IMG/VR virus record: IMGVR_UViG_3300020477_000990
Span: 62,001-126,000 of that record
Length of the DNA: 64,000 bases
Strand: one strand, 5' to 3'
Within the stretch, counting starts at the first letter, position 1. The number at the start of each line of letters is the position of its first letter. The notes beneath the pieces were generated by a model. The model was not told the DNA's origin and did not search any database. It saw only the letters and a list, made by a program, of their open reading frames with translations. Positions 1 to 32,983 of this stretch are shown here, piece after piece. Position numbers and translations under genes: made by a program.

Positions 1-22
1 GACAGCAATTGCAATTCCTTTA

Positions 23-418
23 ATGGCGATGTTTATTGCAGATTTAGTTATAGGGTTTCATCCATATATGTTATGGGTCTATGGTGCAATAGGTTTATCA
101 ACTTTAATTAGTAAATGGTCAATGCAATTTAATAAAAAGTATATTCAATTAGGAGCAATGACAATAGTATCTTCTGTATTATTTTTTATAATAACAAATT
201 TTGCAGTATGGACTATGTGGGATTACTATCCAAAAACATTAGATGGTTTAATAATGTGTTATACAATGGCAATACCATTTTTTCAAAATACATTATTAGG
301 AACTATAATATATACAGCTCTAATGGCATCTTTAACTGTAGCATTAACTCGACCTTTTGAAAATACCTATGTACTGGTAATAAGCAAAGGAAGAGATTAT
401 GTTAACAAACATTTTTAA
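23..418 (+). CDS. DUF6580-like membrane protein (putative cobalamin-uptake component), probably 5'-truncated by the window edge
   Basis: Hydrophobic; SSVLFFIITNFAVW...YPKTLDGLIMCYTMAIPFF motif as I recall it for DUF6580; reading frame stays open to position 2; directly upstream of the TonB-dependent receptor. Confidence 0.65.
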   Translation: MAMFIADLVIGFHPYMLWVYGAIGLSTLISKWSMQFNKKYIQLGAMTIVSSVLFFIITNFAVWTMWDYYPKTLDGLIMCYTMAIPFFQNTLLGTIIYTALMASLTVALTRPFENTYVLVISKGRDYVNKHF

Positions 419-2213
419 GTTAATAATAATATTTTTTATTTTTTTAGGAACAGCAAAAGCAAACGAATGCTATTGGGAAGAAATGAAAGACGAAACAATC
501 GTTTGTGATTCGTTAGTTATTAATATACCAATATTTTTTACACAAACACCTTCACATAGAAGTAATGAAATACATAATAACGAATACATATTTCCAGACA
601 ACGAAAGTATTCTAACAGATGCATTAAATGATGTAGCAAATTTTAATGCAGTACGTTCTGGATCAAAAGGACAACAAACATCGTTGTTTACTAGAGGAAC
701 AAATTCAAATCATACATTAGTAACAATAAACGGATCAGCAATTACAGATCACTCAACAACTAATGGAGCAACAGATCTTAACAATGTAAATATAAATTTT
801 GCAGATGGTATACATTTGTATACAGGTCCTATGAGTACTATATATGGACCTAATGCAATAGGTGGTGTAGTTGATATTAAAACAAGTGATGTTAAAGAAA
901 ATGAAGTAGTAGTTACTTATGGATCTAACAATACCAAACAAACACATATTACAATTAGTGAAGGACTTACAAACTTTGGAATAAATTTTGAAGAATCAGA
1001 TGGTATATCAGTTTATCCAAAAGGTGATGAAAAAGATGGATACAACATACTTGGATTTAACTTTGGGCATTTAACAAAAATTGATAATACAGAAATTAAA
1101 ATAACAGGAATAACAAATAATACAGAATCAGATTTAGATGCCTCGGGTGCAGATGATTTAGACTATACAGCAGATACTAAATTCCATTTTGGACAAATAC
1201 AAACGTCTACAGAATTTGATGATGGAATTCTTAAATCAGTTTTAGATGCTACCTATTGGGATAGAGAATATGTAAATGGAACTGAACTTGATGAATATGA
1301 TTCTTCAGCTATACATTCAGCAACTGATTGGATAACACACACAGACAAAGTATCAACTAAAACTGGAATAGATACTGTTTGGTATAGTGCAGAATTTAAC
1401 AACAGAGGATCTTATAATTCTTCTGTAGATAAAGAAGCAAATACAACTGGAATATATCATAACTTTGATTATGTAACTGATTTAGATATAGTAGTGTCAG
1501 GTGGTTTACGTTATGATTATAATTCAATAGTAGAAGGGCAATCAACATACAGGGTTGGTACAGCATACAAAGGACTTTACTTTAGTAGGTCAACAGGGTA
1601 TAGAGCACCAACACTATATGAATTATATGGTGCAGACAATTACGGGTATAGTGGTAATGAAAATTTAAAAGCAGAAACTTCTGTAACAAATGAAGTAGGA
1701 TATAAATTTGGTAACCAAACGGTAAATGGTAATATTAGTGTTTACTCTACAAAAATAGAAGATATGATTACATACGGAAATTCTACTTATAGTAATGACA
1801 GTAATGGTACGTCAACAATGAAAGGTGGAGATATAAAACTTAACTACTACAAAGGAAATTATGGTTTTCATAATAGTATAGCATTTACGTCAGCACAAGA
1901 CTCAACTGATAATTGGTTAAAAAGAAGACCACATACGATTATCAATTCATCAGTTAGTTATTATAAAGATGATTTTTATATTTCTCCAAGTATAAATTAT
2001 TTTGGAAAACACAAAGATACACATTCGGTTGATTATTCAACGATAACTGTTGGGTCTGAAATTACAGCAGATATTAAAACTGGGTATCATTTAAATGACA
2101 ATTCTAAATTGGAATTAAGCATTAATAATATATTAGATAATGATTATGAAAGGCCACATGGTTATAATCAGGACGGAAGATCAATAAATCTTACAGTAAA
2201 ATGGAAATTTTAG
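399..2213 (+). CDS. btuB: TonB-dependent outer-membrane receptor, BtuB-like
   Basis: Signal peptide; plug motif QQTSLFTRGTNSNHTLVTINGS; GPMSTIYGPNAIGGVV; NILDNDYE...GYNQDGRS; C-terminal aromatic residue (..VKWKF). Confidence 0.8.
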   Translation: MLTNIFKLIIIFFIFLGTAKANECYWEEMKDETIVCDSLVINIPIFFTQTPSHRSNEIHNNEYIFPDNESILTDALNDVANFNAVRSGSKGQQTSLFTRGTNSNHTLVTINGSAITDHSTTNGATDLNNVNINFADGIHLYTGPMSTIYGPNAIGGVVDIKTSDVKENEVVVTYGSNNTKQTHITISEGLTNFGINFEESDGISVYPKGDEKDGYNILGFNFGHLTKIDNTEIKITGITNNTESDLDASGADDLDYTADTKFHFGQIQTSTEFDDGILKSVLDATYWDREYVNGTELDEYDSSAIHSATDWITHTDKVSTKTGIDTVWYSAEFNNRGSYNSSVDKEANTTGIYHNFDYVTDLDIVVSGGLRYDYNSIVEGQSTYRVGTAYKGLYFSRSTGYRAPTLYELYGADNYGYSGNENLKAETSVTNEVGYKFGNQTVNGNISVYSTKIEDMITYGNSTYSNDSNGTSTMKGGDIKLNYYKGNYGFHNSIAFTSAQDSTDNWLKRRPHTIINSSVSYYKDDFYISPSINYFGKHKDTHSVDYSTITVGSEITADIKTGYHLNDNSKLELSINNILDNDYERPHGYNQDGRSINLTVKWKF

Positions 2214-2227
2214 GAGTTGCTATGTCC

Positions 2228-2245
2228 GATAAATACTGCTATAAT
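2228..2245 (+). promoter_or_regulatory. Promoter: ATAAATA box followed by extended -10 TGCTATAAT
   Basis: TGCTATAAT at 2237-2245 in the short gap before the desaturase-sufB operon. Confidence 0.45.
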
Positions 2246-2275
2246 AAGCTAAAGTAATTTAATAAAGTGGAAAAG

Positions 2276-3022
2276 ATGGCAAAAAAAACATTACATCCTT
2301 GGTACTTATTTTTCGCACAGGTAATAGCTCACTTGTCTATTATACCTATGATTCTATATGGCTCATGGTATCATTGGCTATTAGGTTTTGGAGTTTATTT
2401 CATAACAGGTTGTTTTGGAATGACAATGACATATCATAGATTGCTATCACATAATAGTTGGAATGCACCAAAGTGGTATGAGTATTTTGGATCATTATGT
2501 GGAACTTATGGACTAACAGGATCAACAATTGGATGGGTAGCAATACATAAAGAACATCATCATTTTACTGATCAAGAAAAAGATCCGCACTCTCCGGAAC
2601 ATCAAGGATTTTTTAGAGTGCAATGGTTAAGTATGTTTGAAGACCCTAATCCTCGATATGTTGTAAGACTAATTAGAGATCCAATTCATTTCTTTTTACA
2701 TAAATGGTATTTTGCTATTCATATTGTAATTGCAATAATTTGGTATCTTATTGATCCAATGTTATTAGTTGCCGCATATCTATTTCCAGCAATGATATTA
2801 TGGAATGCAGGATCGTTTATTAATACATTAACACATATGACAGGATATAGAAATTGGGAAACTAAAGACAATTCAACTAACATACCATTATTAGGAATTT
2901 TAATGTGGGGTGAAGGTTGGCATAATAATCATCATCATGATCCACAAAATAAATCATTCCAACATCATTGGTGGGAATTTGATATTGGTGGATATTTTAT
3001 TAGATTACTGGAACGCAAATGA
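2276..3022 (+). CDS. Membrane fatty-acid desaturase (delta-9/DesC-like)
   Basis: Three His boxes HRLLSH, HKEHH, HNNHH; GEGWHNNHH motif; ATG at 2276 preferred over GTG at 2267. Confidence 0.9.
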
Positions 3023-4485
3023 CAGATGTAAAAGATTCAATATCAAAAGAAACTATTAGTACAGTTAACAAATTGTCCGAGTATAAGCATGGCTGGGCAA
3101 CTGATATAGATAGTGATAAAATTCCAAAAGGTTTAAATGAAGATACTATTAAGTTAATATCATTTAAAAAGAAAGAGCCACAATGGATGTTACAATGGAG
3201 GCTTGATGCATACAAAGTTTGGAAAACATTAAAAGAACCTAAATGGGCAAAAGTAGATTTACCAAAAATAGATTATCAAGATTTATATTATTATTCAGCA
3301 CCAAAAGGTTTTGAAAATAAACCTAAGTCTTTAGATGAGCTAGATCCAAAACTTTTAGAAACATATGAAAAGTTAGGGATACCATTGTCAGAACAAAAAG
3401 CATTAAATGGCATAGCCGTAGATGCCGTATTTGATAGTGTATCTGTTGCTACTACATTTAAAGAAGAATTAAAAAAAGCTGGAGTAATATTTTGTCCTAT
3501 ATCAGAAGCAATAAAAGAACATCCTGAGTTAGTTAGAAAATATTTAGGTACAGTAATACCAATATCAGATCATTTTTATTCAGCATTAAATTCAGCAGTA
3601 TTTACAGATGGGTCTTTTGTTTATATTCCACCAGGAGTTAAATGTCCAATGGAGTTATCCACATATTTTAGAATTAATGAAGCAAAGACTGGGCAGTTTG
3701 AACGTACTTTAATTATAGCTGACAAAGGTAGCTATGTAAGTTATTTAGAAGGATGTACAGCACCAATGCGTGATGAAAACCAATTACACGCCGCTAACGT
3801 AGAACTTATTGCTTTAGATGATGCAGAAATAAAATATTCCACAGTACAAAATTGGTATCCAGGAGATGAAAATGGAAAAGGTGGAATTTATAATTTAGTA
3901 ACTAAACGTGGTAAGTGTAAAGGAAAGAATTCAAAAATATCTTGGACGCAAGTAGAGACAGGGTCAGCAGTAACTTGGAAGTATCCAAGCTGTATATTAC
4001 AAGGAGATAATTCTAAAGGAGAGTTTTATTCTGTAGCAGTAACTAATAATTATCAACAAGCAGATACAGGAACTAAAATGATTCACATAGGTAAGAATAC
4101 AACAAGTAGAATTATTTCAAAAGGTATATCATTAGGTAAATCACAAAATACATATAGAGGACTAGTAAATGTATTAAAAAATTCTCGTAAGTCAAGAAAC
4201 TATACGCAATGTGATTCATTGTTAATAGGAGATGAATGTGGGGCTCATACTGTTCCATTTATTAGAAATAGAAATAAAACTTCTGTAGTTGAGCATGAAG
4301 CATCAACATCTAAGATTAGTGATGATCAATTATTTTATTTAATGCAACGAGGAATAAGTCAAGAAGAAGCAGTAAGTTTAATTGTCAATGGTTTCTGTAA
4401 AGAAGTTTTACAACAACTGCCAATGGAATTTGCAGTTGAGGCACAAAAGTTAGTTAGCATTAGTTTAGAAGGTAGTGTAGGGTAA
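3019..4485 (+). CDS. sufB: Fe-S cluster assembly scaffold SufB
   Basis: [72 protein letters not shown]. Confidence 0.97.
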
Positions 4486-5087
4486 TGAAAATTGCAATCA
4501 CAGGGCATACGTCAGGAGTTGGAAAGTCTTTGTATGATAAGTTAGTAGGGCTTGGACATACGGTATTTGGATATAGTAGATCAAATGGATTTGATTTATC
4601 TAATAAAGATCAAGTTGCAAAGATAGTAAAGAAGATAGTTTATCGTGAGAATATAAATTACACTAAAGGTGGAATTAAATTTCAAGATGATGATGTAGAT
4701 GTTTTTATAAACAATGCTTATTACAATTGGTCACAAGTGGATTTATTATATAAAGTATATGAACCTTGGAAAGATAAAGATAAAATAATTATTAATATAG
4801 GTTCAGTTACAGGTGATAGTTCTAAAAAATATATGCATGAATACCAAGTGCATAAAGTTGCATTAGACAATGCCTGTAAACAATTACAACCTTTAGGTAT
4901 ATGTAAAGTAATAAATGTTCGTCCCGGGTGGGTTGATACTAATTTTAATCCTAAAAAAACTATTCCTAAAGATATTGAAATTTTAAAACCAGATCAAGTT
5001 GCAGATATTGTATTATACATTTTAAATCAACCTAAAGAAATATGTATAAAAACTATTTCTGTGGAACCATGGTATAAGGATGAGTAA
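4485..5087 (+). CDS. Short-chain dehydrogenase/reductase (SDR)
   Basis: TGHTSGVG Rossmann motif, FINNA, IINIGS, YxxxK (YQVHK). Confidence 0.85.
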   Translation: MKIAITGHTSGVGKSLYDKLVGLGHTVFGYSRSNGFDLSNKDQVAKIVKKIVYRENINYTKGGIKFQDDDVDVFINNAYYNWSQVDLLYKVYEPWKDKDKIIINIGSVTGDSSKKYMHEYQVHKVALDNACKQLQPLGICKVINVRPGWVDTNFNPKKTIPKDIEILKPDQVADIVLYILNQPKEICIKTISVEPWYKDE

Positions 5088-5692
5088 TGAAAAAACGTGT
5101 AGCAATTACTGGGCATACAGATGGTATTGGTAAAAATATATATAATACATTAAAAAAAAGTAAACAATATCTTGTTTCTGGATATTCATTAGATAATGAT
5201 TATAATATAGAAGATAGCCAAAAAATAATTAATGCTTGTATTGATGATGACATTTTTATAAACAATGCATTTGATGGATGGTCACAAGTTGACCTTCTTT
5301 ATAAATTATATACTAAATGGCAAGATCAAAATAAAACTATTATTAATATAGGTTCAGTTACTAGTGATACAAAAAATCCTGTAATAGAAAGATATCAAAT
5401 TCAAAAGAAGGCACTTGAAAATGCTTGTAAGCAATTACAGCCGTTAGGTAAATGTAAAGTAACTAATATTAAATTAGGATGGGTTGATTCTCCAATGATG
5501 GATCCATGGCTTAAAAAAGCAGACTTACCAAAAGATTTTAAAATTTTAAAGCCAAAGAATGTATCAGAAATAATATTATATATTTTAAATCAACCAAAGA
5601 ATATCTGTATAAAAGAAATTGCAATAGAACCTTGGCCATCAAGAGTATTGTTTAATCAATATAATCCAACAGCAAAAGGATGGCTAGAATAA
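5087..5692 (+). CDS. SDR, tandem paralog of 4485..5087
   Basis: TGHTDGIG, FINNA, IINIGS, YQIQK; shared NACKQLQPLG and ILNQPK.ICIK segments. Confidence 0.85.
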   Translation: MKKRVAITGHTDGIGKNIYNTLKKSKQYLVSGYSLDNDYNIEDSQKIINACIDDDIFINNAFDGWSQVDLLYKLYTKWQDQNKTIINIGSVTSDTKNPVIERYQIQKKALENACKQLQPLGKCKVTNIKLGWVDSPMMDPWLKKADLPKDFKILKPKNVSEIILYILNQPKNICIKEIAIEPWPSRVLFNQYNPTAKGWLE

Positions 5693-6297
5693 TGTCTGAA
5701 AAAATTATACAGTATAACTCATCATATAGAGTTCTTGTTGAAGAATTTTTAGAAAAAGCAAAAGAAGAAGGTAGTGCTGGAACATATACTCAAGATAAAT
5801 TTAATATAGATAATTTAGATGAGCATAGTAGTTTATGGATAGCATTAGTTGATAATAAAGTTGCTAGTATTAGCTATGCTGAAAGAAGTTTTATAACAGG
5901 TACACCTGAGTCAATTAGAAAATGTAGATACCATATACTTAAAAAACATAGGCACGGTAGATATGGATTTAAAATGATGAAACATCAAATTGCTTGGGCA
6001 AAAGAAAACGGGTTTAAACATTATTATTGGACACACGATGTCAATGATAAAGCAATTAATAAATTGTTTCAACACAAAAGAACTTACATTGTAGGTGACA
6101 ATAGTTGGTTTGAAGATGAAGATTATAAAAAACTTACTTTAGAAACTGATTTAGTATTCCACGATTCGCCAAAGTCAGATATGATACAATTTGTTTATAG
6201 TTATTATATAGATCCTAATTATAAGTGGGAACCAATTAGAGCTGTTATATGGCATAAACATAATGGAATTATAGATAATGTTGCAGAGGTATTATGA
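5692..6297 (+). CDS. Putative GNAT-like acetyltransferase
   Basis: YHILKKHRHGRYGFKMM resembles GNAT motif A (RxxGxG); ATG overlaps the upstream TAA. Confidence 0.45.
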   Translation: MSEKIIQYNSSYRVLVEEFLEKAKEEGSAGTYTQDKFNIDNLDEHSSLWIALVDNKVASISYAERSFITGTPESIRKCRYHILKKHRHGRYGFKMMKHQIAWAKENGFKHYYWTHDVNDKAINKLFQHKRTYIVGDNSWFEDEDYKKLTLETDLVFHDSPKSDMIQFVYSYYIDPNYKWEPIRAVIWHKHNGIIDNVAEVL

Positions 6298-8075
6298 AAA
6301 CAGTTCAGTTAGGTACAGTATCAGTAATTCATGAAACATGGTTGCCATATGCCGCGGCCTGTTTAATAAGTTATTGTAATAAAATACCAGAAATTAAATC
6401 AAATTATAAATTTAATAATCCAATATACAAATATAAACCTGTAGAAGAATATACAGAACAGTTTAAAAACATTGATGTATTTGGGCTAACTTGTTATGTT
6501 TGGAATCAAGCATACAACGATCAATTAATGAGTCATTATAAAGATGTTAACCCAAACGGTATCACAATGTATGGTGGTCCTAATGTGCCTGAAGATCCTA
6601 AACTTGCAGAGCAGTTTGCAAAAGAACATCCTTATATAGATATATTTTGGGTAGGTCCAGGAGAAAAATTAGTTAGTAAGTTTTTATTAAATATTGACGC
6701 TCCTATGAGTACACATGATGGAAGTTTTGGATTAACGTGGAATAATGTAGAAGTAGGACGTAAGTTATATCAAATTGGAACAGATGAAATGCCTACACCT
6801 TATATTGACGGAGTATTTGATTCAATATTAAAAGAAGAAAAAAGAGTTAAAGCATCATTTGAAACTAATCGTGGTTGTCCTTTTAAATGTGCGTTTTGTG
6901 ATTGGGGCGGACAAGCAAGATCAAAAGTTACAAAGTTTGATATGGATCCTGTGTATGAGCAGTTAGACTTTTTATATAAACATACAAACATAGCAGAAGT
7001 AGAAATACTTGATGCTAACTTTGGTATGCTACCTAGAGATTTAGATGTTGTTAAACAAATGAAAGCAAACAAAGAAGCAACAGGTAATAATCCAAAAATA
7101 TCTTATAGTGGACTTGCAAAAAATGGAAGTAAGTGGTTGCCAGAGATTATAGACATTATACATAATAATTTAGATGCAGATCAACGTAACCTTAAAGTAA
7201 GTTTTCAAACACACGCCAAAGAAACATTAAAAGTAATTAATAGAGCAAATATTAACAATGATAAACTTACACCACTTGTAAATAGTTTTAAAGCAAAAGG
7301 ATTGCCTGTTACAAGTGAAATGATTATTGCATTACCAGGTGAAACAGCAGACAGTTGGTTATATAGTTTAAACAGAGATTATGAAATTGGTATTGACTTT
7401 ATGCGAACTTACTTTTTAAATTTAGTACCTAATACAGAGTTATATACAGAAAAGTTTCAAAAAGAACATAAAGTTAAATCTAAAATACTTGCGTTTCCAT
7501 ATTCATTTTCAGGATTAGGATATAAACAATTACATAATCATCCTGAGTATAGAGATGAACGTAGTACATATGAGTTTGAAGAAATAGAAATTATGCACAG
7601 ATGTTTTTCATATAATGAAGATGAAATTGTTCGTATGTTTGACTATTGGTGGTTCTATCATAACTTTCATAATTCAAGAGCATTAAGTTATACTATGAAA
7701 GATTTATATGATACAGGTCATGACATACAATTTCAAGCTAAATGGTTTTACAAACATTTATATCAAATGCCTTTTATAGAATCATTAGTAGAAAAGAATA
7801 GACAAATTATTAGAAACATATTTAAAGATGAACCAAGAACAGAAGTTAAAGATTTAGCAACGTATTTGTATTTTTCAAGATGTTTACGTGCAGATGAGAT
7901 TTATCAATTTTGGCATAATAAAGATAAATTCCAAGAAGACTTATCAAAAGTGTATCCAGAAAAATTGGTTAAATACGATATAGCACAATGGAAAAAAGAA
8001 TTTGATATGAGTATGTATGGTACAGATGCTCGTATAAAACCAACAGATATAATTGCAGTAGGGAGCGAAAGATAA
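6294..8075 (+). CDS. Cobalamin-binding radical SAM protein (class B methyltransferase-like)
   Basis: N-terminal LPYAAACL..GLTCYVWN..YGGPNV B12-binding-type domain; ETNRGCPFKCAFC; ILDANFG; IIALPGET. Confidence 0.85.
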   Translation: MKTVQLGTVSVIHETWLPYAAACLISYCNKIPEIKSNYKFNNPIYKYKPVEEYTEQFKNIDVFGLTCYVWNQAYNDQLMSHYKDVNPNGITMYGGPNVPEDPKLAEQFAKEHPYIDIFWVGPGEKLVSKFLLNIDAPMSTHDGSFGLTWNNVEVGRKLYQIGTDEMPTPYIDGVFDSILKEEKRVKASFETNRGCPFKCAFCDWGGQARSKVTKFDMDPVYEQLDFLYKHTNIAEVEILDANFGMLPRDLDVVKQMKANKEATGNNPKISYSGLAKNGSKWLPEIIDIIHNNLDADQRNLKVSFQTHAKETLKVINRANINNDKLTPLVNSFKAKGLPVTSEMIIALPGETADSWLYSLNRDYEIGIDFMRTYFLNLVPNTELYTEKFQKEHKVKSKILAFPYSFSGLGYKQLHNHPEYRDERSTYEFEEIEIMHRCFSYNEDEIVRMFDYWWFYHNFHNSRALSYTMKDLYDTGHDIQFQAKWFYKHLYQMPFIESLVEKNRQIIRNIFKDEPRTEVKDLATYLYFSRCLRADEIYQFWHNKDKFQEDLSKVYPEKLVKYDIAQWKKEFDMSMYGTDARIKPTDIIAVGSER

Positions 8076-8839
8076 TGTGGAAAGAAATAGTTAAAAATGA
8101 AATATGGGAATATGATAACTTTCTTGATGATGCAACAATAAAAGAAATTAAAGATGATATGACTATGGCTGGTAAAACAGAACTTCAGCCTGGTGAAGCA
8201 ATATTACCTAATTTTAGAAACTCAGGAGTAAATGCTACTACTTACAATTATACAGTTCATAGAACTGATATGCATAAAAATCAAAAGTATATTGACATTT
8301 ATATGAATAAAGTAAATGAATTATTAGAGCCATTAACAAATACAAAAGTACCAACAACTAATTTAGAAGGATTGCAATTGTTTACAAAAAGTTTTAGTAA
8401 GCGAGGTTGGTATGATTTACACGTAGAGCCAATTAACAAATACGGATTGTATGCATTTCAACATTTTTTATCTACAGAAGATGGTGGCGAATTAATTTTT
8501 CCTAATAAGCAAAGTATTGAAAAATTTTTAGAAGAACACTCAGGACAAAAGGATCGTTGGCCAGAAAATGTTAGTTTAGTGGAGTCAAAGGGGTATCCGG
8601 TAAGATATTTGGATGACATTTCCATAAAACCCGTGTATAATAAGTGTGTGGTGTTTGCTATAGGTTCTGCCCATTACGTTACACCATTAAAAGGGGAAGT
8701 GTCAGAAGTATCAAGGCAAGTTGTTACAGGTTGGCCATATGCTACTAAAGATTTAATAGATAGCTTAGATAAAAATTGCAACTTTAATCACTACTTTGAT
8801 TCTGAAGAATATAAAAAACCAGTAGAACAATGTCACTAG
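8075..8839 (+). CDS. Fe(II)/2OG oxygenase (prolyl-hydroxylase-like)
   Basis: H-V-E triad start, DGGELIFP, distal H (SAHYV), RQVVTGWP. Confidence 0.7.
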   Translation: MWKEIVKNEIWEYDNFLDDATIKEIKDDMTMAGKTELQPGEAILPNFRNSGVNATTYNYTVHRTDMHKNQKYIDIYMNKVNELLEPLTNTKVPTTNLEGLQLFTKSFSKRGWYDLHVEPINKYGLYAFQHFLSTEDGGELIFPNKQSIEKFLEEHSGQKDRWPENVSLVESKGYPVRYLDDISIKPVYNKCVVFAIGSAHYVTPLKGEVSEVSRQVVTGWPYATKDLIDSLDKNCNFNHYFDSEEYKKPVEQCH

Positions 8840-8846: not shown

Positions 8847-9530
8847 ATGTTAGAGATAAAAAACTTAGAAGTTACAGTACAAGATACTAAAATCATTAAT
8901 GGTCTTAGCCTTACAGTTAATAAGGGTGAGGTTCATGCGATTATAGGTCCTAATGGTTGTGGCAAAAGTACTTTAGCAAATGCAATAGTTGGTAAAAATG
9001 ATTATGAAGCAAATGGTATAGTAAAGATAAATGGAGATGATGTTTTTAAAATGGATGTTACTGAAAGGGCAAAAGCAGGATTGTTTATGAGTTTTCAATC
9101 TCCACCAAGTATTTCTGGGCTTACAAATTACAAAATAGTGCAACATCGTACATCTGATGTAAAAAAATATAAGCAAGATATTAAAAGTTTAAATTTATTA
9201 GACGATTGGGCAACTAGAGAGTTTAATGAAGGAGCTTCTGGTGGTGAACGTAAAAAAAATGAGTTATTACAATTATTACAATCTAATCCACAAATAGTTA
9301 TACTTGATGAAGTTGATACAGGACTAGATGTTGATGCATTAAAATTAGTTACAAAAATAGTAAATGAATATAAAAACAAATATGGTTGGATAGTTATTAG
9401 CCATAATACAAAAGTATTAAAAGATTTAAATCCAACGTATGTGCATATAGTAAACAATGGTACTATAGTTGAAACTGGTAGTGTTGCTGTGTTGGATAAA
9501 GTAGATAAACAAGGATTTGCAAATGAATAA
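8847..9530 (+). CDS. sufC: Fe-S assembly ATPase SufC (shortened)
   Basis: GEVHAIIGPNGCGKST, GLFMSFQSP, SGGERKKNE, LDEVDTGLDVDAL. Confidence 0.93.
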   Translation: MLEIKNLEVTVQDTKIINGLSLTVNKGEVHAIIGPNGCGKSTLANAIVGKNDYEANGIVKINGDDVFKMDVTERAKAGLFMSFQSPPSISGLTNYKIVQHRTSDVKKYKQDIKSLNLLDDWATREFNEGASGGERKKNELLQLLQSNPQIVILDEVDTGLDVDALKLVTKIVNEYKNKYGWIVISHNTKVLKDLNPTYVHIVNNGTIVETGSVAVLDKVDKQGFANE

Positions 9531-10095
9531 TCATTATGTTGTAAGTGATAAGTTAGATTGTAAAATCAATCTTAATGAAAAAGATGCAGTAACTATAAAC
9601 GTAAAAGAAAATGCCAAAGCCTGTTTATTTTTTAAAAATTCAAAAGGAACAAAATCTACAATTGATGTTACATTACAAGAAAATGCAATATGTGAAATGT
9701 TTGGATTTTTTAAAAATAAAAGTTTCGATACAGACATTAAAACAACTGTAGTTCATAAAGGTAAAAAGTCAAAATGTAATCAAGATTTTAGATTTGTCAA
9801 TAAAAAAAGCAATACATCTTTTGAAGGAAAGATAGTAATACCAAAACATATAAGTGGTTGCGAAAGTCATATGCTAAACAAAAATATTTTATTAGATAAT
9901 CAATCAGATGCATTTTCAAAACCAGAATTAGAAATACTTAATGATGATACAATTTGTACTCATGGTTGTACTATTGGAGCATTGGATGAGGAACAGTTAT
10001 TTTATTTACAACATAGAGGATTAACATATGATGAAGCTGTTGAAGTATTAGTTGAAAGTTTTACTCATGGCAGAGTAAGGAGGTTTTACGTATAA
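9523..10095 (+). CDS. sufD: Reduced SufD-like protein (about 190 aa)
   Basis: FEGKIVI, NILLDNQSDAFSKPELEILNDDTICTHGCTIG..EEQLFYLQHRGL; lacks much of the N-terminal beta-helix. Confidence 0.85.
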   Translation: MNNHYVVSDKLDCKINLNEKDAVTINVKENAKACLFFKNSKGTKSTIDVTLQENAICEMFGFFKNKSFDTDIKTTVVHKGKKSKCNQDFRFVNKKSNTSFEGKIVIPKHISGCESHMLNKNILLDNQSDAFSKPELEILNDDTICTHGCTIGALDEEQLFYLQHRGLTYDEAVEVLVESFTHGRVRRFYV

Positions 10096-10805
10096 TGTGG
10101 AAAGAAGTAGTTCAAGATCAAGTATGGTATACAGAAAACTTTATAGATGAAAGTTTAGTTGATCAAACATTAGAAAAAATACGTAGTGCAGAAACTAAAG
10201 TGTTAGATGCAGATGAACAGCCACATATTATAAGTAAATCACATTATAATTATAATCATGTAAAATATAACATACGTGAAGATAAAATAGTATTAGCTGA
10301 AACTATTTTAAAATTAAACGAATTGTTTGATAAAATCCATAGACCTATTCTTATACAAGATATAGATAATAAAAATGTATTACAATTTACTACTAAAACA
10401 TTTAGTAAGAAAAGTACCTACCATGTACATACTGAAAGGCGTGATATGTATGGTGACTTTGTTTTTATACATTATCTAACTACTGAAAAAGGTGGAGAGT
10501 TAATATTACCAGATCAAGATATATTGTCCGAACATTTTAGATTAAATCCAGATGGGCAAGCCAATTGGGAACGATTTAGACATGATTTAAAAATGGCAGG
10601 ACAACGAGTATACCTAGCTGGTCCATTAACTATTAAACCAATAAGAAATACCTGTGTTGTAATGAGAGTTGGTATAGCACATTTTGTTAATCCAGTTATT
10701 AATGCTACAGAAAATTGTCGTGCTGTTATTACAGGATGGCCATTTGCTAATAATGAATGGCGTGAAGCTCAACGAAAAAATTTAAAACAAGAAATAGTAA
10801 ATTAG
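10095..10805 (+). CDS. Fe(II)/2OG oxygenase, paralog of 8075..8839
   Basis: Shared MWKE start, H-T-E, KGGELILP, IAHFV, RAVITGWP. Confidence 0.7.
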   Translation: MWKEVVQDQVWYTENFIDESLVDQTLEKIRSAETKVLDADEQPHIISKSHYNYNHVKYNIREDKIVLAETILKLNELFDKIHRPILIQDIDNKNVLQFTTKTFSKKSTYHVHTERRDMYGDFVFIHYLTTEKGGELILPDQDILSEHFRLNPDGQANWERFRHDLKMAGQRVYLAGPLTIKPIRNTCVVMRVGIAHFVNPVINATENCRAVITGWPFANNEWREAQRKNLKQEIVN

Positions 10806-10892
10806 AAATAATATTACTAGTATTGCTGGTACTTGTTGAATTAGCAACCATTCGATCCATTTTTTTATTTTATAGCTTAAAGGATCTTTCAT
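10782..10892 (-). CDS. 36-aa membrane peptide not in the ORF track (MKDPLSYKIKKWIEWLLIQQVPAILVILFLIYYFLF)
   Basis: ATG overlaps the SET-gene stop (TAATG coupling); hydrophobic C-terminus. Confidence 0.45.
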   Translation of the reverse strand: MKDPLSYKIKKWIEWLLIQQVPAILVILFLIYYFLF

Positions 10893-11239
10893 TAGAATAA
10901 AAACTTTTGCCCTCTCGCAAATTCTTCATAGTTCATTGTAAGTTCCACACCTTTTTTAATCTTCTTTGTAGACACAAATGTTTTTTCAACAGTTATAGTA
11001 ACCTTGGTACCTATTAATTTAAGATTAGCATCTTCACTATGATTTATATACGTATCTTCGCAATTCATGTTGTGAGTGTCATTAACTGGCATTTTTCTTG
11101 GTGCTTGTTCTTTTGGTAAAGCAGGACCTTCTAATGTTACAACAGTTTTGCCTTTAGGAATATCTTCCATAGCAAACCTACCATGTCCGTGTATATCTGA
11201 ATCTTTTATTTCTGTTTTAAACAGCCACTGGTTGGGCAT
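10892..11239 (-). CDS. SET-domain protein (lysine methyltransferase-like)
   Basis: IHGHGRFA..DIPKG, YINHS.DAN, IKKGVELTMNY. Confidence 0.85.
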   Translation of the reverse strand: MPNQWLFKTEIKDSDIHGHGRFAMEDIPKGKTVVTLEGPALPKEQAPRKMPVNDTHNMNCEDTYINHSEDANLKLIGTKVTITVEKTFVSTKKIKKGVELTMNYEEFARGQKFLF

Positions 11240-12032
11240 CTGCTATAGCCTTATGTTCTTTATAATCATTGTTAATACGCAATGAACCCATATTGTTAGT
11301 TTCGTTCCAATCAGAATCATTAATTTCTTGTAAGTCTGATTGATCTTTTAAACTAAACATTAAGCTGATTCTAGGTGTTTTACCTGAATTAACTACAGTA
11401 TGTCTAAAGCCAATATTTAAAAAGTATGCTGATCCATCTGGTTCTAAATGATATGATTCTTCTTTACCTTTACGCCAAAAATAGTTTGTAGCTTCTTGTT
11501 CTGCAAATATAGGAACAATAACTCTTACGGCATACGTTGGATCGTAATCAATATGTGGAGTAAGTGTTTTGCCTGGATCAAGTCTAACAAGTCTTACTCT
11601 AATAGCATCTGCATTAAACGATTCAACTACTTCTTGAAAATAAGAACCTATGTATTTTTCTGTTGGAGTATTGTAATTGTGTTCATTAAGTCCAGGAGCA
11701 AGTCCTTTACCTAATCTAGATTTTAATTTATACTTTGCAATTTTACTAATTGCTTCATCACCAGTACCTGCTGTTTTACCCATTACTTCACAGCTTTCAA
11801 CTGTTGGTGCTTCTGCATTAGGATCAAATTCAGTAAGATTGATTTGCTTAAAATGTTTATATACACTCATAACTAATTCGTGATTGTTTGAACACAATGC
11901 CTTATTAGTTTCCATTACGTCACCATAATCATTGGCCAACTTTAAAGCTTCTTCACGAAGTCTTTCAATATCAAATTTTTTATTTTGAAACTTCCACATT
12001 GTTGGAAGTTGATACTTTTTACGAATTAACAT
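11217..12032 (-). CDS. Asp/Asn beta-hydroxylase-like Fe/2OG oxygenase
   Basis: RVRLVRLDPG..LTPHID, LNIGFRHTVVNSG..PRISL. Confidence 0.8.
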   Translation of the reverse strand: MLIRKKYQLPTMWKFQNKKFDIERLREEALKLANDYGDVMETNKALCSNNHELVMSVYKHFKQINLTEFDPNAEAPTVESCEVMGKTAGTGDEAISKIAKYKLKSRLGKGLAPGLNEHNYNTPTEKYIGSYFQEVVESFNADAIRVRLVRLDPGKTLTPHIDYDPTYAVRVIVPIFAEQEATNYFWRKGKEESYHLEPDGSAYFLNIGFRHTVVNSGKTPRISLMFSLKDQSDLQEINDSDWNETNNMGSLRINNDYKEHKAIADAQPVAV

Positions 12033-12125
12033 AGATTTCTTTCCTTATAACTTTACTACTTGTATTTATTATAAATTATCATGAGGTCAAAATCAACCAA
12101 TAAATATGTAATATAAGCATATAAC

Positions 12126-12154
12126 TTGTGATTTATAGAAAGCTAGTGTATAAT
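12126..12154 (+). promoter_or_regulatory. Sigma70-type promoter TTGTGA-N17-TATAAT
   Basis: Boxes at 12126-31 and 12149-54, at the head of the radical SAM operon. Confidence 0.55.
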
Positions 12155-12158
12155 AGTA

Positions 12159-13502
12159 ATGATAGACCCAGAAAAAAATAAAGCAATTTGTCCATATCTT
12201 TTTAAAGGGGCATTGTTGGAGCATAGTCAAGGAAACATAAGACCATGCTGTAGATGGGAAACAGATGATGTTAGAGGCGACAATGTTTGGCCAAAGAAAA
12301 ATTTTTTAATTAATAAAGATGAAAAATATAATTCATATTTTACAGAAGCTAGGCAACAGATGATAGATGGTAAACCAGTTTATGAGTGTAGAGGATGTAT
12401 TACACAAGAAAAGCATGGAATTGAAAGTATGCGTACAAATGCGTTGAAAAATTTTGTAAACGACAATGAGAGCTTAATTAAAATAGAAGATTTATATAGA
12501 AAGCCTACAGGGTTGTTAAAAGAAATAACTGTACCAAAGTTAGAATATTTAGAAATAGAAAGTGGAAGATATTGTAATTTAAAATGTAGATCATGCGGTC
12601 CTGAATTATCCACAAGTTGGGATGAGGATTTAAAATTAAGTAAAGATCTTCAAAATCATTTTTTTGGTAATGAGCCAATAAAATGGAAGAACTTATTAGA
12701 TGAAAAGTCAATAAATCAATATCTTGAAAGTATTGAATATGATACTATTAAAGATCTTAAAACAGTTAAAATAACTGGTGGTGAACCTTTTTTAAGTGAT
12801 TCAGTTTTAAAATTTTTAAATAATTTAGTTGATTTTGATATTGCTAAAAACATTATTCTGGAAGTGTTTACAAATTGTAGTTTCTTTCCAAAAGAAAAGT
12901 ACAGAGAAATTCTTCCAAAATTTAAGAGAGTTCATATTATTTTAAGTTTAGATGGTGTAGGTGAACACATGGAATTTCTTAGAAAAAAATCAAAATGGAA
13001 AGTAGTAGAAAAAGTATCTAAGTATTGGGAAGGGTTATCATTAAGCAACAAAAATATATATTTAGAAATAAATCATACAATAACTCTTTACAATGTTTTA
13101 TATATTGGAGAATTTTTGTTTTGGATATTTAAGCATTTTAGTAGAGAATTATTAGAAAAGCATAGACCAGAATTAGGAGGATTTATTAAATCAACAGAAG
13201 TATGGAATCCTAGTTACCTATGTGTGAATAATACAAGTGATATTATAAAAGAAAAAATGCTATCATCTATAAAGTCTGATCAAATCTTGCTAGAAGAAAA
13301 GCTATTAAAATTAGGATACGATGAAGAATTTTTACTACGGTTTCATATAAAAACGGTGTTCATTGAATTGTATGATTTTATTAACGGTGCAGGAAAAGAT
13401 AAAGTTAAAACGTTTATTGAGAAAGCTAATATGTTTGATTCAGTAAGAAAAGAAAATTGGAAAGAAACATTTCCAAAATTAGTAAAGATATTAAATGATT
13501 GA
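12159..13502 (+). CDS. Radical SAM protein with N-terminal twitch domain
   Basis: CPY...RPCC...CRGC N-terminal cysteines; CNLKCRSC; ITGGEPF. Confidence 0.85.
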   Translation: MIDPEKNKAICPYLFKGALLEHSQGNIRPCCRWETDDVRGDNVWPKKNFLINKDEKYNSYFTEARQQMIDGKPVYECRGCITQEKHGIESMRTNALKNFVNDNESLIKIEDLYRKPTGLLKEITVPKLEYLEIESGRYCNLKCRSCGPELSTSWDEDLKLSKDLQNHFFGNEPIKWKNLLDEKSINQYLESIEYDTIKDLKTVKITGGEPFLSDSVLKFLNNLVDFDIAKNIILEVFTNCSFFPKEKYREILPKFKRVHIILSLDGVGEHMEFLRKKSKWKVVEKVSKYWEGLSLSNKNIYLEINHTITLYNVLYIGEFLFWIFKHFSRELLEKHRPELGGFIKSTEVWNPSYLCVNNTSDIIKEKMLSSIKSDQILLEEKLLKLGYDEEFLLRFHIKTVFIELYDFINGAGKDKVKTFIEKANMFDSVRKENWKETFPKLVKILND

Positions 13503-14757
13503 TTATAAAAAACATAAAACATTTTGTCCATACCCTATAAAAGGAGCTGTGATTGAAGGATCAAATTCTATGATTAAACCTTGTTGTAGATGGGATACTA
13601 AAAATCATAAACTAGATACTGGTGTTCCTTTTAGTTATAATAATATTTGGAAAGATATTCGTACAAAAATGTTAAAAGGAGAATATGTTTCTGGTTGTGT
13701 TAAATGCTATAAGGAAGAAGCAGATGGAAATAGAAGTATGCGTACAAATGCCTTAAAGAATTTTGTTGATGATATTAAAGATGTTAATCATTCTATAAGA
13801 GGGCCATTTGGATATAAAGAAACTATTTTGAAAACAGAATTAGAATATTTAGAAATTGAATCAGGAAGATACTGTAATTTAAAATGTAGGTCATGTAGTC
13901 CTAATTTATCTACAAGTTGGGATGAAGATTTAAAAAATAACAAAGATGCTGAACAAAATTTTTATGGAGGGAATAAAGATATTCATCCAGAAATGTTAAG
14001 TAGGCCTAGCATTAATGAATCAATAGCAGAATTAACATATAATGATTGTAAACATTTAAAAGAAATAAAAGTTACTGGTGGTGAACCATTTTTAAGTGAT
14101 GCGTTTCTTAAATTTTTAGAAAATTTAGTTGAATGGGATATATCAAAAAATATTACATTAGATATATTTACAAATTGTAGTTTCTTTCCAAAAGAAAAGT
14201 ATAGAGTATTATTGCCAAAGTTTAAATGCTCGTATATAAATTTAAGTTTAGATGCAATTGGAAAACGTGCTGAATTTATAAGAAAGAAATGTAATTGGAG
14301 TATAGTAGAAAAAGTATCCCAATATTGGGAGCAAGAATCTTTAGAGCATGATAATATTAAATTACAAATTAATCATACTGTTAGTCTATTTAATGTTTTA
14401 TACCTTAATGAGTTTATAATGTGGTGTGTAACAAACTTTAATCAAGACACATTTAATGATATTTCTTTTCTAGATCTTACAATTGTATACGGACCTGATT
14501 ATTTGTGCCTAAATAATGTTAGTGAGGTATCTAAAAATAGAATAATAAGATCATTAGAATTACAAATAATAGAACTAAAACAAAAAGTAAATTTACAAAA
14601 TGCTAGTAAATTATATGATCAAGTATTAAATACTATAAAGGGAAAAGGAACAAACTTACAAAGTATTTTTATTCAAAAAACAGAAATGTTCGATACTATT
14701 AGAAAAGAAAATTGGAAAGAAACATTTCCTGAGTTAGCAGAGGTATTAAATGTCTAA
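13495..14757 (+). CDS. N-terminal-twitch radical SAM, close tandem paralog of 12159..13502
   Basis: Identical LEYLEIESGRYCNLKCRSC, FTNCSFFPKEKYR and RKENWKETFP segments. Confidence 0.85.
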   Translation: MIDYKKHKTFCPYPIKGAVIEGSNSMIKPCCRWDTKNHKLDTGVPFSYNNIWKDIRTKMLKGEYVSGCVKCYKEEADGNRSMRTNALKNFVDDIKDVNHSIRGPFGYKETILKTELEYLEIESGRYCNLKCRSCSPNLSTSWDEDLKNNKDAEQNFYGGNKDIHPEMLSRPSINESIAELTYNDCKHLKEIKVTGGEPFLSDAFLKFLENLVEWDISKNITLDIFTNCSFFPKEKYRVLLPKFKCSYINLSLDAIGKRAEFIRKKCNWSIVEKVSQYWEQESLEHDNIKLQINHTVSLFNVLYLNEFIMWCVTNFNQDTFNDISFLDLTIVYGPDYLCLNNVSEVSKNRIIRSLELQIIELKQKVNLQNASKLYDQVLNTIKGKGTNLQSIFIQKTEMFDTIRKENWKETFPELAEVLNV

Positions 14758-15970
14758 AACATTTTGCATAATGCCATTTATACATATGAACTTAAAGCCA
14801 AAAGGCTTTGTAAGTGCTTGTTGGCGTAATCATGATTCGTTAGGACATTATGGTGATAAAAAACTTAAAGAAATATGGAACAATGACAATTATAAAAATA
14901 TACGTAAAAATTTATTAAATGGAGTGCAACATGAAGGTTGTAAAAGTTGTTGGGATATGGAGAAAGCAAATATAACATCAACAAGGCAACAATGTAATGA
15001 AGATTATAAAAAATATATTCCTAAGGTAATGGAAGAAGTTGTTGATGGTGAATTGCCAATGAATGTAAAATCAATTGAATTGCGTTTTGGTAATGTGTGT
15101 GATTTAAGATGTAGACATTGCTCATCGATATATAGTTCAACTTGGGCAGTAGCAGTAAACAAACATGACGATGTCAAACGATTATTTGACAAATATCAAT
15201 TAACAGAAACAAGTACGTGGCGTGGAATTTCTAAATTACCAGTTGAAACATTTAATCAAGTAGTAAATGATATAGGACCAAGAGTAGAAGAAATAGTTAT
15301 AGCAGGTGGTGAACCTTTAATACAGCCACAGCATTATGATGCTTTAGAAAGGCTTTTACCATATGCATATCATATTACATTAGAGTATAACACTAACTTG
15401 AACAATATCATATTACAAGGTAGACACGTGAGTGATCTTTGGGTGCATTTTAAAAATGTAAATTGTCGTGTTAGTATAGATGGAGATAAAAAGATACATA
15501 GTTACTTAAGAACAGGAAGTGATTTAGAAGCAATTGAAAATAATATTAAAACATTAAAATCTGAATTGCCGGCCAATCAGTTTAATTTAACAACTACCTG
15601 TACGGTTTCTTTATATAACATTTCTAGATTTGATGATATAATTGATTATTATGTATCTTTAGATTGTCCGTTCCATTGTAGTTTAGTTCAATATCCAGAG
15701 GCCTTAAATATTCAATATATTCCAAAGAAAATGAAAGACATTATAACAAAAAGAGTTTATAATAAAATAGATAAGTTAGGAAACATTAAGGAGAATCGTT
15801 TGGCCAAGATAATTAAATGGTCAAACTATGTATTAGATTACATGAATAATACTAACATTAATAATAATATGTTGCCATCTTCAGCAAAAGAATATGTTGA
15901 AACTATGGATAGATTAAATGGAACAAACTTTTTAGAAGTGTATCCAGAGTTTAAGGAGTTTTGGCAATGA
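14750..15970 (+). CDS. N-terminal-twitch radical SAM protein
   Basis: CIMPF..SACW..CKSC; FGNVCDLRCRHC; AGGEP. Confidence 0.85.
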   Translation: MSKTFCIMPFIHMNLKPKGFVSACWRNHDSLGHYGDKKLKEIWNNDNYKNIRKNLLNGVQHEGCKSCWDMEKANITSTRQQCNEDYKKYIPKVMEEVVDGELPMNVKSIELRFGNVCDLRCRHCSSIYSSTWAVAVNKHDDVKRLFDKYQLTETSTWRGISKLPVETFNQVVNDIGPRVEEIVIAGGEPLIQPQHYDALERLLPYAYHITLEYNTNLNNIILQGRHVSDLWVHFKNVNCRVSIDGDKKIHSYLRTGSDLEAIENNIKTLKSELPANQFNLTTTCTVSLYNISRFDDIIDYYVSLDCPFHCSLVQYPEALNIQYIPKKMKDIITKRVYNKIDKLGNIKENRLAKIIKWSNYVLDYMNNTNINNNMLPSSAKEYVETMDRLNGTNFLEVYPEFKEFWQ

Positions 15971-32956: not shown

Positions 32957-32977
32957 TCATATATTTTAAAGTATAAT
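32949..32977 (+). promoter_or_regulatory. Sigma70 promoter of the tmRNA gene, TTGACT-N17-TATAAT
   Basis: Near-consensus boxes. Confidence 0.8.
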
Positions 32978-32983
32978 TACTAT

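What the first reader, a model, noticed from the sequence alone, without database searches (positions are those of the whole stretch)
1..8075. Cobalamin import genes next to a cobalamin-dependent radical SAM gene
Seen: a DUF6580-like gene and a BtuB-like receptor lie about 4 kb from the only B12-binding radical SAM in the window. Known: BtuB needs host TonB/ExbBD, and class B radical SAM enzymes methylate unactivated carbon or phosphorus. Inference: the phage installs a vitamin-scavenging route for its own methyltransferase, which would redirect a limiting marine micronutrient. A phage-encoded receptor could also alter superinfection.
Basis: partly seen in the sequence, partly recalled or inferred. 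Interest (0 to 1): 0.68.

Follow-up and report, generated by a model that had tools for sequence, protein, structure and literature searches.

The report
Phage-borne vitamin B12 uptake genes
A 328-kb T4-like marine phage, probably of SAR11 bacteria, carries a two-gene vitamin B12 uptake module (a BtuB-type outer-membrane receptor plus a small DUF6580 membrane protein) at the head of a gene block that holds a B12-dependent radical SAM methylase, so the virus seems to secure a scarce ocean vitamin for its own chemistry.

Summary
The window lies in a complete 328-kb T4-like phage (Gp23 capsid, large terminase, terminal repeats). It starts inside a DUF6580 gene, followed by a 604-aa TonB-dependent receptor. 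Its only full-length solved relative is E. coli BtuB. A TokK/CysS-like class B radical SAM gene lies 4.1 kb downstream, the only one of that class in the genome.

The receptor clade is sister to Pelagibacteraceae receptors. 22 of 27 cellular homologue loci carry a cobalamin riboswitch directly upstream, as do 16 of 29 IMG/VR phage contigs. DUF6580 sits beside the receptor in 25 of 29 phage contigs and 10 of 11 SAR11 loci. It folds as an ECF S-component, with the solitary B12 transporter BtuM as best match.

This phage lineage has lost the riboswitch.

The receptor-methylase link is conserved in its close relatives and paralleled in SAR11 chromosomes, but most phages with the import pair have no such methylase within 10 kb.

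No TonB was found in the phage or in four SAR11 genomes. The superinfection idea is untested.

Verdict: a real feature, a new variant of a known kind. Neither a paper on it nor a deposited phage genome carrying it was found.

The parts
1..418 (+). DUF6580 membrane protein, 3' part. The full gene starts 133 nt before the window (L001:13867-14418, 183 aa). Candidate inner-membrane cobalamin transporter.
   Evidence: PF20221 E 7.6e-44. AF2 model pLDDT 85.6 has an ECF S-component fold. Best match is BtuM 8OVV, Z 14.2, rmsd 3.0 over 157 aa; 15 S-components lead the list before Z drops to 8.5. H23, H65, C131, D59, N111 and W115 are invariant. In relatives it is the first gene after an AdoCbl-II riboswitch.
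399..2213 (+). BtuB-like TonB-dependent outer-membrane receptor, 604 aa. It has a signal peptide, a TonB-box-like DSLVINI, a plug, a barrel and a C-terminal Phe.
   Evidence: The N-terminal alignment puts DSLVINI on E. coli DTLVVTA. The tree places it with BtuB, sister to Pelagibacteraceae. Homologues are riboswitch-controlled.
2267..3022 (+). Short membrane fatty-acid-desaturase-like di-iron protein, 251 aa, with His boxes HKEHH and HNNHH.
   Evidence: PF00487 E 1.2e-12; DesA family 95 bits, below cut-off; His boxes. Conserved beside the rSAM in L005-7, L099 and L114-116.
3019..4485 (+). SufB, Fe-S cluster assembly scaffold. Inserted in the cassette in this genome only.
   Evidence: NF008773 903 bits, cut-off 717. 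Absent at this place in L005-7 and L114-117.
4485..5087 (+). Short-chain dehydrogenase-like protein, 200 aa. Its counterpart is conserved in relatives.
   Evidence: adh_short E 6e-8. A 200-aa gene sits at the same place in L005-7; 42-43% identity in L115/116.
5087..5692 (+). Second SDR-like protein, 201 aa, a paralogue of the first.
5680..6297 (+). GNAT acetyltransferase-like protein, 205 aa.
   Evidence: PF00583 E 2.7e-6. A GNAT precedes the rSAM in L099 too.
6294..8075 (+). Class B (cobalamin-dependent) radical SAM enzyme of the TokK/ThnK/CysS type, 593 aa. Probable C-methylase.
   Evidence: W70 and W204, invariant in 30 homologues, align with TokK Trp76 (beneath the corrin) and Trp215.
8075..8839 (+). 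2OG-Fe(II)-oxygenase-like protein, 254 aa. Always follows the rSAM in relatives.
   Evidence: No Pfam hit. 29% identical to the 2OG oxygenase at 10095-10805, E 4e-32. The atlas places it among viral 2OG-FeII_Oxy_3 clusters, score 0.97. Synteny.
8847..9530 (+). SufC, Fe-S assembly ATPase.
   Evidence: TIGR01978 240.9 bits, cut-off 212.8.
9517..10095 (+). Short SufD/SufB-core protein, 192 aa.
   Evidence: SUFBD_core E 9.6e-35.
10095..10805 (+). 2OG-Fe(II) oxygenase, 236 aa. Conserved end of the cassette.
   Evidence: PF13640 E 3.6e-5. Same position in L005-7.

Best explanation
The phage carries a captured two-gene cobalamin uptake module.

Proposed mechanism:
1. During infection the BtuB-like receptor is exported to the host outer membrane and takes up cobalamin.
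2. The small DUF6580 protein, which has the fold of a solitary vitamin-binding S-component like BtuM, carries the vitamin across the inner membrane.
3. The vitamin loads the phage's TokK/CysS-type class B radical SAM methylase. That enzyme works with the neighbouring desaturase-like, SDR, GNAT and 2OG-oxygenase genes on a substrate still unknown.
4. SufB, SufC and a short SufD-like protein, interleaved only in this genome, supply 4Fe-4S clusters for this and five further radical SAM enzymes nearby.

Origin and regulation: the module comes from the SAR11 lineage, where riboswitch-btuB-DUF6580 is chromosomal and is often flanked by a class B rSAM. Many related phages keep the AdoCbl-II riboswitch. 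This lineage has replaced it with a short promoter-like leader, so expression would no longer be shut off by B12.

Shown: gene identities by homology and fold; phage nature; phylogenetic placement; riboswitch control and synteny in relatives.
Inferred: cobalamin as the substrate of this particular copy; the DUF6580 transport role; delivery to the phage methylase; the host; the energising system.
For: - Phage.
- Receptor is BtuB-like.
- Tree: the phage/metagenome clade is sister to Pelagibacteraceae (100 SH-aLRT), inside a group with E. coli BtuB and riboswitch-controlled proteobacterial receptors, apart from FepA/CirA.
- Riboswitches: a cobalamin riboswitch lies directly upstream in 22 of 27 cellular loci; 2 of the 5 without are cut short upstream. 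An AdoCbl-II riboswitch lies upstream in 16 of 29 IMG/VR phage contigs and in L012/L015.
- DUF6580 adjacency: 25 of 29 phage contigs, 10 of 11 SAR11 loci, and none of 14 other proteobacterial btuB loci.
- DUF6580 fold. Invariant His/Cys.
- rSAM: with TokK facts from 10.1101/2021.07.10.451909.
- The cassette DUF6580-TBDR-desaturase-SDR-rSAM-2OG oxygenase is conserved in L005-7 and L114-116.
- In SAR11 a class-B-like rSAM flanks the pair in 7 of 11 loci.
- The phage RNR is class Ia, so it is not a B12 consumer. No other class-B rSAM is in the genome.
- The same DNA recurs without differences in another sample's contigs, and the stretch or parts of it are held by runs of about 10 studies.
- BtuM precedent: a solitary S-component-like B12 transporter found by co-localisation with btuB (PMC6072759).
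Against: - This copy has no riboswitch.
- It is only 28-32% identical to the SAR11 proteins and about 26% identical to enterobacterial BtuB (Salmonella hit), and far below NCBIfam's BtuB cut-offs. Specificity could have drifted.
- DUF6580 has no detectable sequence similarity to BtuM or any solved protein. The S-component fold is shared by transporters of many vitamins, with Z values within 1 of each other.
- 21 of 29 phage contigs with the pair lack a class-B rSAM within 10 kb. The SAR11 neighbour rSAM is a different subfamily, about 22% identical.
- No TonB C-terminal domain was found in the phage or in four SAR11 genomes.
- RNA evidence is limited to short contig pieces at 94-100% identity in two metatranscriptomes.
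- Pfam's B12-binding domain scores below its threshold on this rSAM (18.1 against 32.1 bits).
Confidence: 0.6

Rival explanations
1. The import pair is a general B12 supply for the infected cell. It would serve host B12 enzymes, or phage functions encoded elsewhere. Its position next to the TokK-like methylase in this lineage would be incidental gene-island packing.
For: 21 of 29 phage contigs with the pair have no class-B rSAM within 10 kb. In T4-like contigs it sits among replication genes or beside ThyX and Clp genes. DUF6580 also occurs alone in other phage contigs.
Against: The cassette order is conserved in all seven close relatives. An independent rSAM association exists in SAR11 and in L127, L136, L140 and L141. 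No other B12 enzyme was found in this phage.
Confidence: 0.2
2. The receptor and DUF6580 of this riboswitch-less lineage import something other than cobalamin. Candidates are another corrinoid or precursor, or the substrate of the neighbouring tailoring enzymes.
For: No riboswitch here. 61-62% identity even to the nearest phage clade, and about 40% to the riboswitch-bearing phage clades. The S-component fold is not substrate-specific.
Against: The copy nests inside a clade whose other branches are B12-riboswitch-controlled. A cobalamin enzyme is conserved 2-4 kb away. No riboswitch of another class appeared in any locus scanned.
Confidence: 0.1
3. The phage-made outer-membrane protein mainly changes the cell surface, for superinfection exclusion, as a decoy or to mask a receptor. 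Nutrient uptake would be secondary.
For: TonB-dependent receptors, BtuB included, are common phage receptors (established knowledge). No direct evidence here.
Against: Tight pairing with an inner-membrane S-component-like gene and control by a B12 riboswitch in relatives both point to transport.
Confidence: 0.05
4. The stretch is cellular DNA, from a SAR11 chromosome or plasmid, wrongly binned as viral.
For: Many cell-like genes: suf genes, tmRNA, tRNAs, DnaK, ClpS.
Against: It is one 328-kb contig with terminal repeats, a T4 Gp23 capsid and a terminase, no rRNA, and tail-fibre-like genes 10 kb upstream. The cassette also lies in other IMG/VR contigs.
Confidence: 0.02

Closest known systems
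BtuB, the TonB-dependent cobalamin receptor of Gram-negative bacteria (E. coli 1NQE/1NQF)
   Same: Same size class (604 against 614 aa). Plug plus barrel alignable end to end. TonB-box-like segment at the same place. Groups with BtuB in the tree. Relatives sit behind cobalamin riboswitches.
   Different: About 26% identity to enterobacterial BtuB (Salmonella hit), and far below the curated equivalog cut-offs. Encoded by a phage. No riboswitch in this copy. It has an N-terminal Cys-x-Trp...Cys motif shared with the SAR11 proteins. No TonB recognisable in the likely hosts.
BtuM of Thiobacillus denitrificans, a solitary ECF-S-component-like B12 transporter (PMC6072759; 8OVV)
   Same: Small (about 20 kDa) six-helix membrane protein with the S-component fold. 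Encoded next to btuB. The family has an invariant Cys, and BtuM uses a Cys as its cobalt ligand. Best structural match, Z 14.2.
   Different: No detectable sequence similarity. It belongs to a different Pfam family (DUF6580). The Cys position has not been mapped onto BtuM Cys80. Binding and transport are untested.
TokK / ThnK / CysS cobalamin-dependent radical SAM sequential methylases
   Same: Three-domain architecture including the TokK-type C-terminal domain (TM 0.82). CxxxCxxC present. Equivalents of Trp76 and Trp215 are conserved.
   Different: 23% identity. Phage-encoded. It lies in an island of desaturase, SDR, GNAT, 2OG-oxygenase, SET and twitch-rSAM genes rather than an antibiotic cluster. 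Substrate unknown. Below the KedN5-family cut-off.
Nutrient-acquisition auxiliary genes of marine phages (for example pstS; the cobS/cobT-like pair)
   Same: A host-derived uptake function carried by T4-like marine phages, sometimes with the host's own regulatory element.
   Different: An outer-membrane receptor plus an inner-membrane vitamin transporter, controlled in many relatives by a riboswitch. Neither gene was found in any true phage of the GenBank phage collection.

Membership tests
BtuB (TonB-dependent cobalamin receptor) | Plug domain plus 22-strand barrel of BtuB size, alignable over the full length | tested here: met
   Pfam Plug and barrel. BtuB 1NQF aligns residues 72-602 to 42-592, E 2e-26.
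BtuB (TonB-dependent cobalamin receptor) | Reaches the curated equivalog score (TIGR01779, NF007926) | tested here: not met
   199.8 against 599.7 bits; 152.9 against 836 bits. It is still the best family, by 112 bits.
BtuB (TonB-dependent cobalamin receptor) | Groups with cobalamin receptors rather than siderophore or thiamine receptors | tested here: met
   Tree. The outgroup sample was small (FepA, CirA, FhuA), FhuA was not resolved apart from the BtuB-side groups (open fork), and there was no thiamine receptor. No TPP riboswitch appeared in 27 homologue loci.
BtuB (TonB-dependent cobalamin receptor) | Cobalamin riboswitch in the leader | tested here: not met
   None in this genome (RF00174; RF01689; all Rfam families on 15 kb upstream; own model). 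Present in 22 of 27 cellular and 16 of 29 phage homologue loci.
BtuB (TonB-dependent cobalamin receptor) | TonB box near the mature N-terminus | tested here: inconclusive
   DSLVINI aligns with E. coli DTLVVTA. No TonB partner was identified.
BtuB (TonB-dependent cobalamin receptor) | Binds and transports cobalamin | not testable with these tools
   Needs complementation or binding assays.
BtuM-like solitary S-component B12 transporter | ECF S-component fold | tested here: met
   Model pLDDT 85.6. BtuM Z 14.2. The top 15 matches are all S-components.
BtuM-like solitary S-component B12 transporter | Sequence homology to BtuM | tested here: not met
   No PDB sequence hit at E up to 10. It is filed as an analogue, not a member.
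BtuM-like solitary S-component B12 transporter | Cysteine cobalt ligand in a periplasm-facing loop | tested here: inconclusive
   C131, H23 and H65 are invariant in 25 sequences. Structural equivalence to Cys80 was not examined.
BtuM-like solitary S-component B12 transporter | Gene context with btuB and B12 regulation | tested here: met
Class B (cobalamin-dependent) radical SAM | CxxxCxxC radical SAM core | tested here: met
   C195, C199 and C202 are invariant. PF04055 39.9 bits.
Class B (cobalamin-dependent) radical SAM | N-terminal Rossmann cobalamin-binding domain | tested here: met
   Pfam B12-binding scores only 18.1 bits, cut-off 32.1. But the TokK alignment starts at residue 15, the model superposes on TokK over the full length, and homologues at 37-46% identity carry PF02310.
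Class B (cobalamin-dependent) radical SAM | TokK/CysS subfamily signature Trp under the corrin and Trp after the cluster motif | tested here: met
   W70 and W204 are invariant. They align with Trp76 and Trp215.
Class B (cobalamin-dependent) radical SAM | Contains cobalamin and methylates a substrate | not testable with these tools
   Needs anaerobic purification and assays.
KedN5-family C-methyltransferase (NF033712) | Curated subfamily score | tested here: not met
   156.6 against 700 bits, and only the first 390 residues match.
T4-like (Straboviridae-type) phage | Gp23-type major capsid protein and large terminase on the same contig | tested here: met
   Terminal repeats.

The most novel reading that the evidence does not exclude
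DUF6580 is an uncharacterised family of solitary inner-membrane cobalamin transporters. Together with a SAR11-type BtuB that works without a canonical TonB, it forms a minimal two-gene B12 uptake system. T4-like pelagiphages have repeatedly captured this system, often with its AdoCbl-II riboswitch, to feed phage-encoded B12 radical SAM chemistry. That would make vitamin B12 a contested resource in infections of the ocean's most abundant bacteria.
Probability: 0.4. Interest if true: 0.8.

Novelty: new variant of a known kind. Interest (0 to 1): 0.68.

Why it matters
- B12 is scarce in the surface ocean and shapes plankton communities. SAR11 is usually treated as marginal to B12 cycling.
- Here a riboswitch-btuB-DUF6580 locus, often with a class B radical SAM gene, appears in SAR11 chromosomes, including cultured HIMB114, and in at least 29 viral contigs.
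- That gives three testable points: a candidate new B12 transporter family; viruses that bring their own vitamin uptake, and in many cases its riboswitch; and an outer-membrane receptor clade with no recognisable TonB.
- It also ties phage Fe-S assembly genes (sufBCD) to a large set of phage radical SAM enzymes.

Tried and rejected
- Cobalamin riboswitch in this phage: none with RF00174, RF01689 at E up to 1, all Rfam families on 15 kb upstream, or my own model.
- tonB/exbD in the phage: no TonB_C. There is one ExbB-family gene 219 kb from the receptor, with unexplained neighbours. It has no homologue in any other fetched locus, so no link is claimed.
- B12-dependent ribonucleotide reductase as the consumer: rejected. 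The RNR is class Ia NrdAB, above cut-off.
- A PF02310 scan of the genome found nothing, but it also missed the known rSAM, so it is uninformative.
- The 254-aa gene after the rSAM as a TonB or a binding protein: rejected. It has no membrane segment and is a paralogue of a 2OG oxygenase. The 256-aa gene beside the receptor in L012/L014 is a different family.
- Sequence search of DUF6580 against solved structures: blank.
- Literature: no paper holds 'DUF6580'. None was found on phage-encoded BtuB or B12 riboswitches in marine phages.
- GenBank phage collection: the only receptor hits are bacterial records or a distant Acinetobacter record; no DUF6580. A megablast of the region against the collection found nothing.
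- Identity of contig L010: unresolved.
- Expression: the metatranscriptome runs hold only short contig pieces, so there is no verdict.
- No complex prediction was run.

Full report
**What is there**

The window is bases 62001-126000 of a single 328,149-bp IMG/VR record with direct terminal repeats. GC is about 32%. The record has no rRNA. It encodes a T4-type Gp23 capsid protein (E 5.9e-97), a large terminase and tail-fibre-like proteins just upstream of the window. It is therefore a complete jumbo T4-like phage, not a cell.

The finding's region is one co-directional gene string:

| Window coordinates | Gene |
|---|---|
| 1-418 (starts 133 nt before the window) | DUF6580 |
| 399-2213 | TonB-dependent receptor |
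| 2267-3022 | short desaturase-like protein |
| 3019-4485 | SufB |
| 4485-5087, 5087-5692 | two SDR-like proteins |
| 5680-6297 | GNAT |
| 6294-8075 | radical SAM enzyme |
| 8075-8839 | 2OG-oxygenase-like protein |
| 8847-9530 | SufC |
| 9517-10095 | short SufD-like protein |
| 10095-10805 | 2OG oxygenase |

**The receptor**

- Among NCBIfam models the TonB-B12 equivalog is best by 112 bits, though far under its cut-off.
- Among solved structures only E. coli BtuB aligns end to end (E 2e-26). The next hit, CirA, matches the plug alone.
- The protein has a signal peptide, a terminal Phe and a segment, DSLVINI, that aligns with the BtuB TonB box.
- In a maximum-likelihood tree the phage and metagenome sequences form one clade. 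That clade is sister to the Pelagibacteraceae receptors (100 SH-aLRT). Both lie with E. coli BtuB and other proteobacterial homologues, apart from FepA and CirA. FhuA was not resolved apart from them, and the outgroup sample was small.

The strongest functional evidence is regulatory.

- Of 27 cellular homologue loci scanned with Rfam, 22 have a cobalamin riboswitch immediately upstream. These are the AdoCbl-II class in Pelagibacteraceae, including cultured HIMB114 beside its rRNA operon, and the classical class elsewhere. Two of the five without are cut off upstream.
- No riboswitch of another vitamin appeared.

**DUF6580**

- Pfam and NCBI give it no function, and no paper in the library mentions it.
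- It is the gene next to the receptor in 25 of 29 IMG/VR contigs (upstream) and in 10 of 11 Pelagibacteraceae loci (downstream). It is absent from 14 other proteobacterial btuB loci.
- In phage contigs L012, L015 and 14 more it is the first gene after the AdoCbl-II riboswitch.
- A confident model (pLDDT 85.6) has the six-helix ECF S-component fold. The best of 48,161 chains is BtuM with hydroxycobalamin (Z 14.2, rmsd 3.0 A over 157 residues). Fourteen other S-components follow before the score drops to 8.5.
- BtuM is a solitary S-component-like B12 transporter, first predicted from its position next to btuB, and it binds cobalt through a cysteine (PMC6072759). DUF6580 has an invariant Cys and two invariant His.
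- It shows no sequence similarity to BtuM. I therefore call it a likely functional analogue, not a member.

**The radical SAM enzyme**

- It aligns with TokK from residue 15 to 388 (E 5e-49) and with CysS.
- Its model (pLDDT 89.6) superposes on TokK across all three domains, including the C-terminal domain particular to TokK (TM 0.82).
- The cluster cysteines and two tryptophans, W70 and W204, are invariant in 30 homologues. The tryptophans align with TokK Trp76, which lies under the corrin, and Trp215. [quoted passage not shown]
- Pfam's B12-binding model is under threshold on this sequence, but it is over threshold on many homologues at 37-46% identity.
- It is the only enzyme of this class in the genome.
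- The phage's ribonucleotide reductase is the B12-independent class Ia.

**Is the link between import and methylase real?**

For it:
- In the closest relatives (L005-7, L114-116) the order DUF6580, receptor, desaturase, SDR, rSAM, 2OG oxygenase is kept. The suf genes, second SDR and GNAT are absent there, so those are insertions in this genome.
- In SAR11 chromosomes a class-B-like rSAM of a different subfamily (about 22% identity) flanks the pair in 7 of 11 loci.

Against a general link:
- 21 of 29 phage contigs with the pair show no such gene within 10 kb.
- The TokK-like gene also occurs without the receptor nearby.

**Regulation and energy**

- This phage has no cobalamin riboswitch by four searches.
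- The 76-nt leader holds a TTGACA-17-TATAAA promoter-like site. A terminator-like hairpin precedes the gene before it. This is inference only.
- No TonB C-terminal domain is found with two models in the phage or in four Pelagibacteraceae genomes. Each of the two of these genomes scanned for it has a single TolQ/ExbB-family gene. How this receptor clade is powered is unexplained.
- A phage ExbB-family gene with two membrane-protein neighbours lies 219 kb away. Nothing ties it to the receptor.

**Occurrence**

- The stretch or parts of it are held by marine metagenome runs of about ten studies. Contigs of a run from another sample and study match positions 1-3672 and 4252-6000 with few or no differences.
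- Two metatranscriptomes hold only short pieces, which is no proof of expression.
- Neither gene occurs in a true phage of the GenBank phage collection.

**Host**

The host is inferred to be Pelagibacterales, from the receptor's sister group, the alphaproteobacterial two-piece tmRNA and the base composition.

**Verdict**

The import interpretation is well supported by comparative genomics. The 'for its own methyltransferase' step is partly supported. The superinfection idea is untested. Overall this is a new variant of a known kind, a nutrient-uptake auxiliary gene set, with a candidate new B12 transporter family inside it.

Noticed in passing
G000:C1:281253-283096 (L008:1210-3053), outside the window: A MotA/TolQ/ExbB-family gene (187 aa) is followed by a 235-aa protein with an ExbD/TolR-like transmembrane segment carrying an Asp, and by a 188-aa membrane protein. 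The trio lies between DnaK and ClpS genes. The 235-aa protein falls in viral-only atlas clusters. It may be a phage-encoded proton-driven motor.
   Followed up: partly
window 10892-24228: An island of tailoring enzymes: five more radical SAM genes (four of the N-terminal-twitch type NF033640), a SET-domain gene, an Asp/Arg-hydroxylase-like gene, a NodU-like carbamoyltransferase and an NDP-sugar dehydrogenase. Similar islands lie in other marine phage contigs (L098-L100).
   Followed up: partly
window 3019-4485, 8847-10095: sufB, sufC and a short sufD-like gene are interleaved with the cassette in this genome only. IMG/VR contigs L140 and L141 carry a SufB (69% identity) near a more distant receptor and a class-B-like rSAM.
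   Followed up: partly
window 32937-33270; tRNAs at 36915, 38065, 38143, 40258, 54329: An alphaproteobacterial two-piece (permuted) tmRNA with tag ADENLALAA, and five tRNA genes, in a phage genome.
   Followed up: no
L001:6087-7178 and 9605-10855 (4-8 kb upstream of the window): A MoxR-like AAA ATPase (phrog_1297) and a DUF2201 metallopeptidase/VWA protein (phrog_1314). From memory, this pair is often labelled cobS/cobT in marine phages. It is conserved upstream of the cassette in L115-L117. No NCBIfam match.
   Followed up: partly
L017 (HIMB114), L019-L023, L025, L039: Pelagibacteraceae chromosomes carry AdoCbl-II riboswitch, btuB-like receptor and DUF6580, often beside a class-B-like rSAM. 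No TonB C-terminal domain is detectable in four such genomes. This bears on whether and how SAR11 uses B12.
   Followed up: partly
L010 (ENA contig, 52.7 kb, 28% GC): A cell-like contig (aldehyde dehydrogenase, TauD, PanB, bactofilin, tRNA) with riboswitch and receptor divergent from DUF6580 plus a B12-binding rSAM. Its receptor nests inside the phage/metagenome clade. The organism is not identified.
   Followed up: partly
window 2267-3022: The desaturase-like gene follows the receptor. An earlier metagenome survey (PMC2211319) reported a cobalamin riboswitch before an ole1-like desaturase in Sargasso Sea data, possibly the same kind of cassette.
   Followed up: no
window 50795-53881: A 1028-aa ORF in a stretch of higher GC (about 41% against 30%) matches phage head-decoration and tail-fibre PHROGs.
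   Followed up: no
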